A stretch of 64,000 bases of DNA, from contig CP075493.1 in the NCBI GenBank assembly GCA_021613535.1, positions 6,262,001-6,326,000 of the forward strand, in the 5' to 3' direction. Each line of letters begins with the position of its first letter. Position 1 is the stretch's first letter. The notes under the pieces were generated by a model. That model searched no databases. It was given only the letters and a program-made list of their open reading frames with translations, and was not told the DNA's origin. Made by a program: the position numbers and the translations under genes. The DNA comes from Adineta vaga. Its lineage: Eukaryota; Animalia; Rotifera. Below are positions 36,013 through 39,914 of this stretch, piece after piece.

Positions 36013-36501
36013 TTAATAATCAATACCAAAATATCGAAAAGCATGAGTTAATGTCCAAAGAGGACCAATCAAAAGAAATTGTAAATCTTTGAAAAATGCT
36101 GGTTTCTTTCCTTCAATTTCATGACCAATAAACTGACCAATCCAAGCCAGAATGAAAATAATCAATGCCAAACGAAATATTCGGAAATGATTTTTTTCCA
36201 TGATAATCAATGCCATAATTACAAATAAGAATATAATTGCCATTCCAATTGCTAATGAAGGCGATAGATTCCAATAGAAAGCTAAAATTGGTATAAGTAT
36301 AAGTGATGGATTGATAAGTCCCACTTGACCAATAGATATTGTATTACGAATATTCTTTGGTACAACTGGTAAACACCAAAGCATGGCAAAAATTGTAAAT
36401 GTTATTGCTGGTACACAGATCTTATGTATGAGAATATTCACAGGATTTTGATGTGATAAAGAATATTCATCTAACCATGCAGTTAATTCTTTTCCCGGCA
36501 T
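36013..36501 (-). CDS. Mpo1/DUF962-family membrane protein (2-hydroxy fatty acid dioxygenase-like), intronless, bacterial-type
   Basis: EYSLSHQNPVNILIHKICVP and AWIGQFIGHEIEGKKPAFFKDLQFLLIGPLW are signature motifs of the family. Confidence 0.9.
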   Translation of the reverse strand: MPGKELTAWLDEYSLSHQNPVNILIHKICVPAITFTIFAMLWCLPVVPKNIRNTISIGQVGLINPSLILIPILAFYWNLSPSLAIGMAIIFLFVIMALIIMEKNHFRIFRLALIIFILAWIGQFIGHEIEGKKPAFFKDLQFLLIGPLWTLTHAFRYFGIDY

Positions 36502-36658: not shown

Positions 36659-39600
36659 CTAACGACGACGTCGACCACGTTTCGCTTTTGGTGTTAATCT
36701 AAAATACAAATAAAATCCACTATTAGATATCATTTAATCGTCTCTAGAAAACATTTCTACTAAGATAGTCTGTATATCTCGAACTTACATTGTTTTATTT
36801 CCATTAAGATGCTGTTGTGGATCATATTTAAGAACTAAATCAGTTGCTTCTGGATGTCGTTCTATATACGCTTGTTTTGCTTCATCATAAGCTAAACGCA
36901 TTTCTTCTTGATGTAATTGCACAACATCATTTATCGCTCCACATTTTTCATTATTATTAAAATGTTCATAACCTTTGATCGGTTTACGACAAACATAACA
37001 CATTGATGCACCACACGCACAAGTCATTTTATTGCAACCTATTGAATAATATAAGCGAAAGAATTTTGGTAAGTGCAGGAAAATTCATTCAAAATTGTAT
37101 ACCTTCAAGCTTATAAAATCGTTGTTTACATTTATAACAAATTCGAATCATCGCTTCTGAAACACGATTTTCAATAAATGTTCGCATATCTAATTCATCT
37201 TTTTTCTCAACTTCATCACATCGTAATGGAATATGATTTGATTCTCCACAACTTCGACAGGTTTCTTTCAAACATTCTTGATTTAAACAACGAAAAACAC
37301 GTTCATTCGGATCATCAATAACTAGAATCATAAATGACATTTTTTCTAAAGTCACTTCTATGGATTAGAAAGAATTGCTTAACTTACTTGTTCCAAATGT
37401 ACAAAATTTACATTGTTCAAAATTTGAAATATTCGCTCGACGTAATTCTTCTTGTTGGATTTTAATAAGTAATCGAGAAAAAAGTGTCGGTGCCAATAAA
37501 TGACCCATTAATGATGTGGAATATTCTGATTTACATGTCGGATTTAAACATGTAAAAAAACATTCACCATTCGATATAAAACCATTCTCAATATAATTTC
37601 TTATACATGTTCTATAGAAAATGAATGTAGAAAGTAAAACTAGGCAGTTGAAACAGCCTACCGACAAAATCGATGATCATTATCACATTTAATCATATCA
37701 TCATCAAGTAATTGATCATCACAGCAACATTCACATGTTTGTAATGTTCCATTCAATGCTGCATCATGAATTTGTTCATCACGTAAATCTTTTTTCCGTG
37801 TCAAATATTCTTTAATGAGAAGAAGAAAAAAAAAGAAAAATTACTGCCAGATTAAAACATTCAAACAAGAAAGAAAACAATCTAATCTCTCATTATTTCT
37901 GTAAATCTTGAATATAATAAATCACGTCATCTTCTTTATCTCGTGTATAGAACATATCTCTTGATTTAGTTCTTAATATTGGATGTTCTTGACAAATTTG
38001 AACGAAACGATTCAGTAGTTCAGCGGATGGTTGACGTGTTCGTGTCATTAAATCAATGCCTGCACTAGTGAAAAGTGTTGAGCCAAACATTGTTGCTACC
38101 CATTGATAGGGCTGATCAGCAGGTGTTTCATCATCAACAAAAACAAAACCAAACTGACTAGTGAATAATTTCATCGCACCATTTCCTCGCCATTGAAAAC
38201 GACTTGGTTTCAACGTTGATTGAGTATCGATCCCACTGATACTCGTTGGTGTGTAATGTGAAAAAGGTCGTTTAGTATAATATTCAACAAGATCATTGAT
38301 ACGTACATGTCCATCAGGTAACGTATCACGAATTGAATATGTTATTGTTGGTGCTAATCTACTTTTCCACATGTTAAGATTTGTGGCATAAATATGCCAA
38401 AGACCCAAAGCACGATTAGGATTGAATTCCATTACACTTGCTTCATCGATTTCTTTCGATGACATGATGAGTATTGTGTCGAAAGATAGTTTGCCTTTGT
38501 TTTCGATCAATAAAGCAAATGCGTCCGGTAGCGTTTACGCGTCAATGAAGAATGGGTTGGTTAGAAGAAGAAAAAAAAAGCGAGAACTGACTAAACGTGT
38601 TTTTCTTTCTTTCGTTCTGTTTTTTTCTTAACGGTAAATAACATTACGACACAAAAGCATGTATTCTTTTGATCAAACTATTCTTTCCTGTACTTACTCA
38701 CCTATAATTTCATCTTCATGTTTTGTATAACACAATTCCTAGACGAAAGAAATGTTCATTAGTGAAAATGAATATTAAAAAAGAGTCTTACTTTGTAAAA
38801 TATCTCATCAGGAATATCAGGAATTGAAAGCGCTGCTCGAGCTCGTTGATTCATTCGTTTTGGAACAGCTAAAATCAAGTTTCAATGGAAACTTCAGAAT
38901 TTTCTTTACTTGAGATCGTTTTACCGTTAAGAGATTTGTTTCGATGATGATTTGAATTCATATGATATGTAAAAAATTCTTCTCGAAGTTGTTTCATAGC
39001 TGGTGCAAAACGATAATTATTAGTTTCTAACATCTGTTTGATATAATCACTGGACATTCGAACAAAAGCATTGGCTAAATAAATATAGGCATGTGTTTTA
39101 TATGATTCCGAAACATTCTTCGTTCGATCATAGAAATATTCTAATGGATTTGGAAATGTTTTGAGAAATTCTTCAACTTCAAATTTTGGATTACGTAAAT
39201 TTTCTTTTAATCGTTCATTACGTAAACGTTCTAATTTTTCTGTTAATTTTACATAACCATGTTCGATAAGACTTGTAATTAATGTATTTAAATCTGGTTT
39301 ATTCGATGAATTATCAAGAAATTTCATATAGGATTCTAATGCATAATCAGGATCAATATCTGGTAAAATAGCAAGTAAACGATGATACTCATCTGGAATA
39401 AAACCATCATCAATATTCATATCATCAAATGATCGTTTCGTAGTGGTGGTGGAGGAGGAGGTGGAGGACTGAACAGCATCATAGGAAAGTAATTCATTAA
39501 CAATATCATCATACCAATTTGGATTTGATTCATTTTTTAAACGAATATAAACATCTTTAATATGATCATGTGGAATTGAATTGAAGACATCGTAGAGAGT

Positions 39601-39914
39601 TTGAAGAGTATCATCAGTAATTGTTGGCGTAACTGTCGTTGTCACAGTGGTCGACGGTTCTGTTGTATAGATATCTTTTGTAGGATCAGTTACTTTACCA
39701 AACGAAAGAATTTCTGCAGCAATATTTGAACAAATTGTTTCAATTGAGGCAGTACGATGTATATGCCATCCGATGATTTCAAGAGGAACTTGAACACCAG
39801 GAAATATATCATGTAAACGATCACGTATGACAATGACGGATGGATGCTAAGAAATATAAATTGGTTTTCGATATAAGAAAAATGTAGTTATCTTACAAGA
39901 TTTGCATCCGTCAT
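36659..39914 (-). CDS. RNF216: RNF216/TRIAD3-like RING-between-RING E3 ubiquitin ligase
   Basis: N-terminal CUE-like [12 protein letters not shown]; RING1 CECC..HRFC..C..CLNPTC; IBR CKFC..CLNQEC..CRSC..HIPLRC; RING2 [23 protein letters not shown]. Confidence 0.88.
37893..38465 (-). CDS. Intronless lipocalin-like (fungal/bacterial-type) protein nested in an RNF216 intron on the same strand
   Basis: [14 protein letters not shown] (GxW), ITYS, GIDT, FQWRGNG and [21 protein letters not shown] resemble an uncharacterised calycin-like family of fungi and bacteria; lies inside intron 37810-38701. Confidence 0.75.
   Translation of the reverse strand: MSSKEIDEASVMEFNPNRALGLWHIYATNLNMWKSRLAPTITYSIRDTLPDGHVRINDLVEYYTKRPFSHYTPTSISGIDTQSTLKPSRFQWRGNGAMKLFTSQFGFVFVDDETPADQPYQWVATMFGSTLFTSAGIDLMTRTRQPSAELLNRFVQICQEHPILRTKSRDMFYTRDKEDDVIYYIQDLQK

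What the first reader, a model, noticed from the sequence alone, without database searches (positions are those of the whole stretch)
37810..38701. Foreign-looking lipocalin-like gene nested on the same strand inside an RNF216 intron
Seen: RNF216 splices EDEII-G|AA-YLTRKK across an 892-nt intron, whereas most introns here are about 50-70 nt. An intact, intronless 190-aa ORF on the same strand fills most of it and stops about 83 nt before the acceptor. Recalled knowledge: its motifs (GxW, MWK, WRGxG, FxxTLFTxAGID) resemble a calycin-like family of fungi and bacteria that I do not recognise from animals. Inference: a horizontally acquired gene that uses the host transcription unit. It could be released by trans-splicing, have its own promoter, or act as an alternative last exon; a phase-1 AAAG|GC at 38495/38494 would fuse it in frame to the RNF216 N-terminus.
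Basis: partly seen in the sequence, partly recalled or inferred. Interest (0 to 1): 0.85.

Follow-up and report, generated by a model that had tools for sequence, protein, structure and literature searches.

The report
Foreign-type lipocalin gene inside RNF216 intron
A small, intact lipocalin-fold gene whose only relatives outside bdelloid rotifers are bacterial, fungal and protist sits on the same strand inside an intron of the rotifer's RNF216 ubiquitin-ligase gene, and comparison with its duplicate on another chromosome suggests it runs on its own promoter rather than on the host gene.

Summary
An 892-nt GT-AG, phase-1 intron of RNF216 (38701-37810, minus strand) holds an intact, intronless 190-aa ORF (38465-37893) that stops 83 nt before the acceptor.

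The protein has no Pfam hit. With a deep alignment it folds at pLDDT 95 into an eight-stranded barrel plus helix, matching E. coli Blc at Z 17.8.

About 60 homologues of about 191 aa occur in bdelloids. The next hits drop to E 5e-16, and every one of those that carries a name is from Actinomycetota, Myxococcota, Basidiomycota or protists. Bdelloids form one long-stemmed clade with no resolved sister, so ancient horizontal acquisition is likely, but the donor is unknown.

The nesting, splice sites and phase are conserved in Adineta, Rotaria and three unnamed bdelloids.

A second copy lies on contig 4 in a collinear (homoeologous) block that lacks RNF216. Its upstream DNA keeps a donor-like relic and two motif blocks also found in the host intron. 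The nest therefore probably predates the bdelloid tetraploidy, and the gene survives without its host. This favours its own promoter. A fusion to RNF216 is not conserved, because in-frame stops lie upstream.

This is an instructive example of known phenomena, not a new kind.

The parts
37893..38465 (-). Intronless CDS (190 aa plus TAA) of a cytosolic-type lipocalin-fold protein, the nested gene
   Evidence: ORF. 59 bdelloid homologues. AlphaFold2 pLDDT 95.4, eight strands plus a C-terminal helix. VIA Z 17.8 to E. coli Blc. dN/dS below 1.
37810..38701 (-). 892-nt phase-1 GT-AG intron of RNF216 that holds the nested gene
   Evidence: Sequence. The same donor (G|GTRAG) and acceptor (AG|AATAYTT) are found in A. 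steineri, Rotaria sp. Silwood1, L013 and L016, with the acceptor also in L019. Host intron lengths are 775-928 nt across species.
38702..38738 (-). RNF216 exon immediately upstream of the host intron ([12 protein letters not shown], then G of the split Glu codon)
   Evidence: tblastn matches at the equivalent position in L009, L010 and L013.
37662..37809 (-). RNF216 exon immediately downstream (…YLTRKK…CECCCDD…CDNDHRFC, the start of RING1). There is no in-frame ATG before the first zinc-ligand cysteines.
   Evidence: 73-78% identical to the first exon of the gene models carrying Rcat_RNF216/IBR in A. steineri and Rotaria.
36785..39914 (-). Whole RNF216 host gene: the N-terminal UBA_RNF216 part at 38702-39914 and the RBR part at 36785-37809
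   Evidence: ORF pieces. The orthologous public models carry PF26112 UBA_RNF216 upstream and PF26200 Rcat_RNF216 / PF01485 IBR downstream of the lipocalin gene. Window exons are 73-90% identical to them.
38535..38549 (-). Conserved upstream motif TTCATTGACGCGTAA, 70 nt before the ATG; candidate core promoter element of the nested gene
   Evidence: The only exact match in the window. Present as TTCATTCACGCGTAAACGC (A. steineri, nested copy), TTCATTCACGAGTAAATGC (Rotaria, nested copy) and CGTTCACGCGTGACAG in all three free clade-B copies.
38606..38641 (-). Conserved upstream block TTATTTACC…CAGAACGAAAGAAAG, about 140-175 nt before the ATG; candidate regulatory element
   Evidence: Aligned in nested and free copies. 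The AGAGAACGAAAGA core is also found upstream of the relocated copy in L026.
38494..38497 (-).
   Evidence: Exists and is in frame here. The upstream open frame is not conserved: in-frame stops lie at -9 (L009), -21 (L016), -33 (L019) and -36 (L007).

Best explanation
**What it is.** A member of a lipocalin-fold family otherwise found in bacteria, fungi, protists and giant viruses. It entered the bdelloid stem lineage, most likely by horizontal transfer, and came to lie on the same strand inside an intron of the RNF216 (RBR E3 ligase) gene. This happened before the bdelloid genome duplication.

**What happened after the duplication.** One copy (this one, contig 1) stayed nested in a still-functional RNF216. 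On the homoeologous chromosome (contig 4) RNF216 decayed and the lipocalin gene stayed.

**How it is expressed (inferred).** The gene is an autonomous transcription unit. Its promoter lies in the 5' 236 nt of the host intron, in the conserved blocks at about -70 and about -150. Its mRNA probably ends in or just beyond the 83 nt before the host acceptor. RNF216 is spliced across it.

**What the protein does (inferred).** It has no signal peptide and is probably a cytosolic binder of a small hydrophobic ligand or lipid.

**Shown versus inferred.**
- Shown: the fold, the conservation, the nesting geometry, the collinear duplicate without a host, and the shared upstream motifs.
- Inferred: the horizontal origin and its timing, promoter function, transcript ends and the ligand.
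For: **Fold.** pLDDT 95.4. 307 PDB lipocalin matches. Z 17.8, rmsd 2.3 A over 151 residues to E. coli Blc; ApoD 16.9; VDE 16.4. 19 of 119 family members hit PF08212.

**Foreign affinity.**
- After the bdelloid cluster (E 2e-91), the next hit among 1.84 billion representatives is E 4.7e-16.
- Named relatives are Pseudonocardia, Myxococcales, Entosiphon, Cronartium, Diphylleia, Auriculariales, Atractiella, Grifola and Meredithblackwellia. None is an animal.
- Bdelloids form one clade (SH-aLRT 99) on a stem of 1.22 substitutions per site.

**Integration and age.**
- Codon GC3 is 0.22, like the host.
- The order UBA_RNF216 / lipocalin / Rcat_RNF216 / Mpo1 is the same in A. steineri and Rotaria.
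- The second copy is at C4:6698931-6699497, in a block collinear with the window over four anchors but lacking RNF216 and Mpo1.
- Chromosomes 1-3 of A. vaga are homoeologous to 4-6 (PMC8494291).
- The Didymodactylos copy branches at the base of clade B (SH-aLRT 99).

**One host gene, not two.**
- The donor and acceptor and phase 1 are conserved.
- The C-terminal half has no in-frame ATG before the RING1 cysteines in four of six species, including this one.

**Autonomy.**
- Free copies are intact, with dN/dS 0.13-0.17.
- No gene is called around them within 6 kb upstream.
- Upstream blocks, including a donor-like relic ATGAAATAATCGGTATGTAGTAA, are shared between nested and free copies. Local alignment z is up to 6.7, with 0 of 300 shuffles reaching the score.
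Against: - No RNA evidence of any kind.
- Similarity between the upstream regions of nested and free copies is modest and not significant in every pairing (z 1.3-6.7).
- The tree gives no sister group, so a donor cannot be named. Differential loss of an old eukaryotic gene is not excluded.
- Only about 30 of the 240 distant hits could be given an organism name, so 'no animal relatives' rests on a sample.
- No canonical AATAAA lies between the stop codon and the host acceptor in any of six species, so where the nested transcript ends is unclear.
- Public annotations model RNF216 as two genes.
Confidence: 0.65

Rival explanations
1. Host-dependent expression. The nested gene has no promoter of its own in this locus. 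It is released from RNF216 pre-mRNA by spliced-leader trans-splicing plus intronic polyadenylation, or it serves as an alternative terminal exon.
For: - Same strand as the host.
- Very tight packing: 236 nt upstream and 83 nt downstream.
- AG sites preceded by pyrimidine runs lie upstream of the ATG in all species.
- From general knowledge, bdelloids use spliced-leader trans-splicing.
- The nested copies evolve about twice as fast as the free ones within Adineta: dN 0.173 against 0.077.
Against: - Free copies without any host gene are conserved and share the upstream motif blocks.
- A relocated clade-A copy (L025/L026) next to an FAD_binding_4/BBE gene keeps the AGAGAACGAAAGA block.
- In-frame stops upstream of the ATG exclude a conserved coding alternative exon.
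Confidence: 0.15
2. There is no nesting. RNF216 has been split into two independent genes (a UBA-only gene and an RBR-only gene), and the lipocalin gene simply lies between them, as in the public annotations.
For: - NCBI models for A. steineri and Rotaria sp. Silwood1 are split in this way.
- Reading through the donor reaches a stop after two to four codons in three species (GTGAGTAA), so a truncated N-terminal product is physically possible.
Against: - Consensus donor and acceptor with the same phase are kept in five or six species. Protein conservation runs right up to both splice sites.
- The downstream half lacks any in-frame ATG before the first RING1 cysteines in this genome, L013, L016 and L019. 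Where an ATG exists, it is at different, non-homologous positions.
- Gene predictors generally cannot model nested genes. One assembly instead fuses the lipocalin to the RBR half (P0220), which shows the models are unstable.
Confidence: 0.07
3. The gene is not horizontally acquired. It is an old eukaryotic lipocalin-like gene inherited vertically and lost in all other sampled animals.
For: - The family is present in several eukaryotic supergroups: fungi, Euglenozoa and Diphylleia.
- The tree is an unresolved polytomy with the bdelloids on a long branch.
- Codon usage is fully host-like.
Against: - It would need many independent losses across Metazoa.
- No hit falls between E 1e-30 and 1e-16.
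- No named animal appears among the sampled relatives.
- The gene is intronless in an intron-rich genome.
- Bdelloids are known to carry thousands of foreign genes, 257 of them predating the tetraploidy (PMC8494291).
Confidence: 0.15
4. The gene makes a fusion protein with RNF216. Either the RNF216 N-terminus is joined to the lipocalin through the AAAG|GC site at 38495/38494, or the lipocalin is spliced onto the RBR half.
For: - The acceptor-like site is in frame in this genome.
- A public model (P0220, 437 aa) joins the lipocalin to Rcat_RNF216.
Against: - In-frame stops lie 9-36 nt upstream of the ATG in four of the six nested copies.
- All homologues end at the same place with a stop codon, and the ATG is invariant.
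- Free copies function alone.
Confidence: 0.03

Closest known systems
Bacterial lipocalin Blc (E. coli; PDB 1qwd, 2aco, 3mbt) and the ApoD / plant temperature-induced lipocalin group (Pfam PF08212 Lipocalin_2)
   Same: - Eight-stranded antiparallel barrel with an N-terminal 3-10 turn and a C-terminal helix. Z 17.8, rmsd 2.3 A, 151 residues aligned.
- G-x-W motif in strand A.
- Some relatives reach PF08212 at E 2.5e-7.
   Different: - About 16% identity. The window protein itself has no Pfam hit at E <= 1.
- No signal peptide or lipobox, so it is presumably cytosolic.
- It carries its own signature: MWK, WRGxG and TLFTxxGxD.
- The ligand is unknown.
Unnamed lipocalin-like family of Actinomycetota, Myxococcota, Basidiomycota/Ascomycota, protists and Nucleocytoviricota. 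Some members are labelled 'lipocalin family protein' or fall in the Atlas cluster 'Botcinic acid biosynthesis cluster B protein 12'.
   Same: - 25-40% identity over the whole length (E down to 5e-16) and the same near-invariant columns.
- Best predicted-structure matches: TM 0.77-0.78.
- Top feature matches: 0.94-0.95.
   Different: - The bdelloid proteins form their own clade on a long stem.
- They have an extended, conserved C-terminal tail (…MFYTRxKxxDxIYYIRDLQ).
- No member has a tested function.
- Bacterial gene neighbourhoods are not conserved.
Ancient horizontally acquired genes of bdelloid rotifers. In A. vaga AV20 there are 257 'ancient' candidates in homoeologous synteny blocks (PMC8494291).
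   Same: - Non-metazoan affinity.
- Host-like composition.
- Present on both homoeologous chromosomes in collinear blocks.
- Shared by Adineta, Rotaria and Didymodactylos.
   Different: - Here one of the two copies lies inside an intron of a conserved animal gene, and the other marks where that host gene was lost.
- I found no report of this gene or arrangement.
Same-strand nested (intron-hosted) protein-coding genes of animals
   Same: A complete gene with its own start, stop and upstream conserved elements lies inside one intron of a larger gene.
   Different: - The guest is of foreign type.
- The host intron is only 892 nt.
- The guest's stop codon is 68-121 nt from the host acceptor in every species.

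Membership tests
Lipocalin fold (calycin superfamily) | Eight-stranded antiparallel beta-barrel followed by a C-terminal alpha-helix | tested here: met
   AlphaFold2 model at pLDDT 95.4 and pTM 0.90, with eight strands plus helix 148-160. Foldseek finds 307 lipocalin chains at E <= 1e-3. VIA Z 15-17.8 to Blc, ApoD, RBP and VDE.
Lipocalin fold (calycin superfamily) | Structurally conserved region 1: G-x-W in strand A | tested here: met
   G21-L-W23. G21 and W23 are near-invariant (at least 90%) across 119 family members.
Lipocalin families of Pfam (PF00061 Lipocalin, PF08212 Lipocalin_2) | Sequence score at or above the curated gathering threshold | tested here: not met
   No family at E <= 1 for the window protein. 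19 of 119 relatives match PF08212 at E <= 0.01, best 2.5e-7. The relationship is therefore at superfamily level, not membership of the curated family.
Classical secreted animal lipocalins / lipoprotein Blc | N-terminal signal peptide or lipobox | tested here: not met
   The N-terminus [20 protein letters not shown] is polar and acidic, with no hydrophobic stretch, in all bdelloid copies. This is by inspection; no predictor was run.
Lipocalin function | Binding of a small hydrophobic ligand in the barrel | not testable with these tools
   Needs expression and ligand screening.
Horizontally acquired gene in a bdelloid | Closest relatives outside the lineage are non-metazoan | tested here: met
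   All named non-rotifer hits are bacteria, fungi or protists.
Horizontally acquired gene in a bdelloid | No orthologue in other animals, including other rotifers | tested here: inconclusive
   Only one representative cluster has E < 1e-30, and it is the bdelloid one.
Horizontally acquired gene in a bdelloid | Phylogeny places the clade inside a donor group with support | tested here: inconclusive
   The bdelloids are monophyletic (SH-aLRT 99) but sit in a polytomy with Myxococcota, Actinomycetota, Basidiomycota and protists.
Horizontally acquired gene in a bdelloid | Physically integrated among bona fide animal genes, not a contaminant | tested here: met
   It lies inside an RNF216 intron on a 100.8-Mb, six-contig assembly. 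The same synteny holds in independent assemblies of two other genera.
Nested intronic gene | The guest lies wholly between a donor and an acceptor of one host gene | tested here: met
   The splice sites, phase and flanking exon sequences are conserved in five or six species. The host halves carry UBA_RNF216 and Rcat_RNF216/IBR in the orthologues.
Nested intronic gene | Host mRNA shown to splice across the guest; guest mRNA shown to be separate | not testable with these tools

The most novel reading that the evidence does not exclude
In the nested copy the foreign gene is processed out of the RNF216 primary transcript, by spliced-leader trans-splicing at an AG upstream of its ATG plus polyadenylation within about 80 nt of the host acceptor. 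One transcription unit would then yield either the E3 ligase or the lipocalin, in a mutually exclusive way. The free homoeologous copy would run on a promoter that the nested copy no longer needs. This would be an intron-embedded, operon-like way of expressing a horizontally acquired gene in an animal.
Probability: 0.12. Interest if true: 0.7.

Novelty: new member of a known kind. Interest (0 to 1): 0.45.

Why it matters
Bdelloid rotifers are the animals with the most foreign genes, but how such genes become expressed is poorly documented case by case. This locus offers a natural comparison inside one genome. The same ancient foreign-type gene is kept once inside an intron of a conserved ligase gene and once alone, where that ligase gene has decayed, with shared upstream motifs.

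That makes promoter autonomy, transcriptional interference between a host and a same-strand guest, and 3' end formation 83 nt from a host acceptor directly testable with existing A. vaga RNA data.

It also flags a systematic annotation error: public assemblies split RNF216 in two, or fuse the guest to it. Finally, it defines an uncharacterised cytosolic lipocalin-like family with a confident structural model.

Tried and rejected
1. **Pfam, NCBIfam and PDB sequence searches with the protein alone.** No significant hit.
2. **Structure prediction from the bdelloid-only alignment.** It failed at pLDDT 42. It only worked after distant relatives were added.
4. **Logan contigs as possible transcripts.** L014, L015, L017 and L018 all start 22 nt before the ATG. 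That leader equals the genomic sequence in L016 and the contigs keep genomic spacing, so they say nothing about a spliced leader or a transcription start.
5. **Profile search of the word-indexed database with the wide alignment.** It returned almost only bdelloids and added no names.
7. **Searching the own genome with Pfam PF26200 and PF26112.** These families are not in the local library.
8. **RNF216 identity.** It rests on precomputed Pfam labels of the orthologous models plus local exon-by-exon tblastn.
9. **Relics of RNF216 coding exons around the contig-4 copy.** None found by tblastn or tblastx. Only the donor-like relic upstream was seen.
10. **Bacterial gene neighbourhoods as a clue to function.** There is no conserved operon. 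In Pseudonocardia the gene lies next to rsmE and dnaJ/hrcA. In a Myxococcales contig it lies among acyl-CoA dehydrogenase and enoyl-CoA hydratase genes on the other strand.
11. **Sigma-70-type promoter and terminator scan.** Uninformative for a eukaryote.
12. **Literature.** No paper on a bdelloid lipocalin-like foreign gene or this nesting.
Full report
**1. Observation**

On the minus strand, the RNF216 exon ending ...GAAGATGAAATTATAG (last base 38702) is followed by GTGAGTAAGT. The next RNF216 exon begins at 37809 (AATATTTGACACGG...) after ...CATTAAAG. The intron is 38701-37810, 892 nt, phase 1, and the split codon G|AA encodes Glu. Other introns of the gene are about 50-57 nt.

Inside the intron an ORF runs from ATG 38465 to TAA 37895-37893, 190 aa. 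Its stop lies 83 nt before the acceptor.

**2. What the protein is**

Alone, it matches no Pfam or NCBIfam model at E <= 1. It gives only insignificant PDB sequence hits, to major urinary proteins at E about 0.6.

A word-indexed search found 59 homologues at 54-83% identity, nearly all 190-192 aa. The named ones are from Adineta steineri, four Rotaria species and Didymodactylos carnosus.

An exhaustive HMMER search of 1.84 billion representatives found 240 proteins at E <= 1e-3. One is the bdelloid cluster (E 2e-91). The next is at 4.7e-16.

Thirty of these were looked up. Those with names are:
- Pseudonocardia
- Myxococcales (three)
- Entosiphon
- Diphylleia
- the basidiomycetes Cronartium, Auriculariales, Atractiella, Grifola and Meredithblackwellia

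None is an animal.

Nineteen of the 119 proteins in alignment A2, which holds the window protein, ten other bdelloid copies and 108 distant relatives, match PF08212 Lipocalin_2 at E <= 0.01, and three match the VDE lipocalin domain.

The bdelloid-only alignment gave a useless model at pLDDT 42. The 119-sequence alignment gave pLDDT 95.4 and pTM 0.90: eight strands and a C-terminal helix.

Structural matches:
- Foldseek: 307 PDB chains at E <= 1e-3, all lipocalins.
- VIA-align: Z 17.8 (rmsd 2.3 A, 151 residues) to E. coli Blc; 16.9 to ApoD; 16.4 to the VDE lipocalin domain; 15.9 to Arabidopsis TIL.
- Nearest predicted-structure clusters are from Ascomycota, Nucleocytoviricota and Actinomycetota. 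Giant-virus lipocalins also match.
- Feature search ranks Basidiomycota, Nucleocytoviricota and Ascomycota clusters above nematode and arthropod lipocalins.

The N-terminus is polar, so the protein is presumably cytosolic. This is by inspection.

It is therefore a lipocalin-fold protein of an uncharacterised, mainly microbial subfamily. It does not pass the curated Pfam thresholds.

**3. Origin**

In a 118-row tree the ten bdelloid copies form one clade (SH-aLRT 99) on a stem of 1.22 substitutions per site. That clade sits in an unresolved group with myxobacterial, actinobacterial, basidiomycete and protist sequences.

The gene is intronless. Its GC3 is 0.22, in a locus of about 30% GC overall, and the other bdelloid copies are similarly AT-rich at third positions, apart from L013.

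Horizontal acquisition before the bdelloid radiation is the most economical reading. The donor cannot be named, and vertical descent with massive loss is not excluded.

**4. Is RNF216 one gene?**

In A. steineri (L007, L008) and Rotaria sp. Silwood1 (L009, L010), public models place the following on one strand:
- a UBA_RNF216-bearing gene
- the lipocalin gene
- an Rcat_RNF216/IBR-bearing gene
- an Mpo1-like gene

Exon-by-exon tblastn shows the same order in an unnamed bdelloid contig (L013) and, for the parts their contigs cover, in L016 and L019.

The donor (G|GTGAGT or G|GTAAG) and the acceptor (AG|AATAYTT) are conserved with the same phase. Host intron lengths are 775-928 nt.

The downstream half has no in-frame ATG before the first RING1 cysteines in this genome, L013, L016 and L019. 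The starts chosen by the annotators in A. steineri (an ATG inside the polypyrimidine tract) and in Rotaria (an internal Met) are not homologous. One assembly instead fuses the lipocalin to the RBR half (P0220).

I conclude that the split models are prediction artefacts and that RNF216 is one gene spliced across the guest. This is inference from conservation. No spliced read was seen.

**5. The second copy and what it shows**

The assembly has 100.8 Mb in six contigs, and the window is C1:6262001-6326000. A second intact copy (64% identity) lies at C4:6698931-6699497.

Thirty kilobases around it are collinear, in inverted orientation, with the window at four anchors:

| Window | Contig-4 region |
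|---|---|
| 45.0 kb | 7.7 kb |
| 42.6 kb | 11.5 kb |
| lipocalin gene | lipocalin gene |
| 32.9-29.6 kb | 24.5-29.8 kb |

RNF216, the Mpo1-like gene and the genes at 33-35.8 kb are absent from the contig-4 block. The 32.9-29.6 kb anchor includes the homologue of the Anoctamin gene that follows the free copy in A. steineri.

Size and contig number fit the A. vaga AV20 assembly, in which chromosomes 1-3 are homoeologous to 4-6 and 257 foreign gene candidates predate the tetraploidy (PMC8494291). The species identity is my inference.

Sequences fall into two groups:
- Clade B (SH-aLRT 99), the free copies: contig 4, A. steineri P0033, R. socialis P0048, with Didymodactylos at its base.
- An A-type grade holding all the RNF216-nested copies.

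One A-type lineage (P0015, seen in many metagenomes) has the gene next to an FAD_binding_4/BBE gene, with no RNF216 nearby.

Upstream of the free clade-B copies three blocks align, in order, with the 5' part of the host intron:
- ATGAAATAATCGGTATGTAGTAA, against GATGAAATTATAGGTGAGTAAGT, which is the end of the RNF216 exon plus its donor
- TTATTTGCC...AGAGAACGAAA
- CGTTCACGCGTGACAG, against TTCATTGACGCGTAAACG

Local alignment scores between nested and free upstream regions exceed all 300 dinucleotide shuffles in two pairings (z 6.7 and 4.5). They are marginal in others. Within clade B the upstream 300 nt are strongly conserved between Adineta and Rotaria (z 75), although synonymous sites are near saturation. 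No RNF216 relic is seen downstream of the free copies.

My reading is that the guest was already inside the RNF216 intron before the tetraploidy. On one homoeologue the host decayed while the guest and its upstream region were kept. The guest therefore does not need the host transcription unit.

**6. Selection**

All ten genomic copies are intact. Nei-Gojobori dN/dS is 0.07-0.66, most 0.13-0.37. The strong AT bias at third positions probably deflates dS. Within Adineta the nested copy has diverged about twice as fast as the free one (dN 0.173 against 0.077).

**7. Fusion and alternative-exon ideas**

The AAAG|GC site is in frame here. However, the first in-frame stop upstream of the ATG lies at:
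- -9 in Rotaria (L009)
- -21 in L016
- -33 in L019
- -36 in A. steineri (L007)
- -72 in this window

An N-terminal fusion is therefore not conserved.

The gap between the stop codon and the host acceptor is 68-121 nt in six species. It holds no AATAAA, and ATTAAA is present in two. Where the guest mRNA ends is open.

**8. Function**

This is inferred only: a cytosolic barrel that binds a small hydrophobic molecule. Bacterial neighbourhoods give no conserved operon. A few relatives are fused or adjacent to PHP phosphoesterase domains.

**9. What could not be done**

All statements about transcripts are therefore inference.

**10. Verdict**

This is a real, conserved, foreign-type lipocalin-fold gene nested in RNF216. 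Its idea that the gene depends on the host transcription unit is disfavoured by the host-less duplicate.

Horizontal transfer in bdelloids and nested genes are both well known, so this is a new and instructive member of known kinds.

Noticed in passing
window 36013-36501 (-): The intronless 162-aa Mpo1-like (PF06127) gene directly downstream of RNF216 keeps this position in A. steineri, Rotaria sp. Silwood1 and the L014 lineage. It is missing, together with RNF216, from the collinear contig-4 block.
   Followed up: partly
L007-L010 (A. steineri, Rotaria sp. Silwood1) and protein P0220: Public annotations split RNF216 into a UBA-only and an RBR-only model around the lipocalin gene. In one assembly they fuse the lipocalin ORF to the RBR half (437 aa). 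These are probably prediction artefacts caused by the nested gene.
   Followed up: partly
window 37893-38465 versus L021 (G000 C4:6698931-6699497): Within Adineta the nested copy has about twice the non-synonymous divergence of the free homoeologous copy (dN 0.173 against 0.077 at similar dS). Terminal branches are about four times longer. Whether this is relaxed constraint or a change of function is unknown.
   Followed up: no
L025-L034 (metagenome contigs carrying P0015): An A-type copy, 74% identical to the window's, lies between an FAD_binding_4/BBE gene and BTB/TLD genes with no RNF216 nearby. It still has the AGAGAACGAAAGA block upstream. This is a third genomic context, probably a relocation in one bdelloid lineage.
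   Followed up: partly
L013 (ENA ERZ26165376 contig, 74 kb): This bdelloid-type contig has the same nested arrangement, but the lipocalin CDS has GC 0.48 and GC3 0.53, against GC3 0.06-0.24 in all the others. It comes from an unidentified, much more GC-rich bdelloid.
   Followed up: no
L014, L015, L017, L018 (Logan contigs of four SRA runs): Four independent assemblies break at exactly the same base, 22 nt upstream of the lipocalin ATG. The 22 nt equal the genomic sequence in L016. The cause is not determined; it could be a variant bubble or a repeat.
   Followed up: partly
L009/L010 5828-6400: In Rotaria sp. Silwood1 the RNF216 intron after the first RBR exon is about 570 nt, where the window has about 52 nt. 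Its content was not examined.
   Followed up: no
proteins P0175, P0212, P0140: Distant relatives of the lipocalin-like domain occur fused to, or labelled as, PHP-family phosphoesterase: P0175 has PHP at 5-219 and the barrel at 378-531. P0140 joins the domain to a GINS Sld5 domain, which is possibly a mis-prediction.
   Followed up: no
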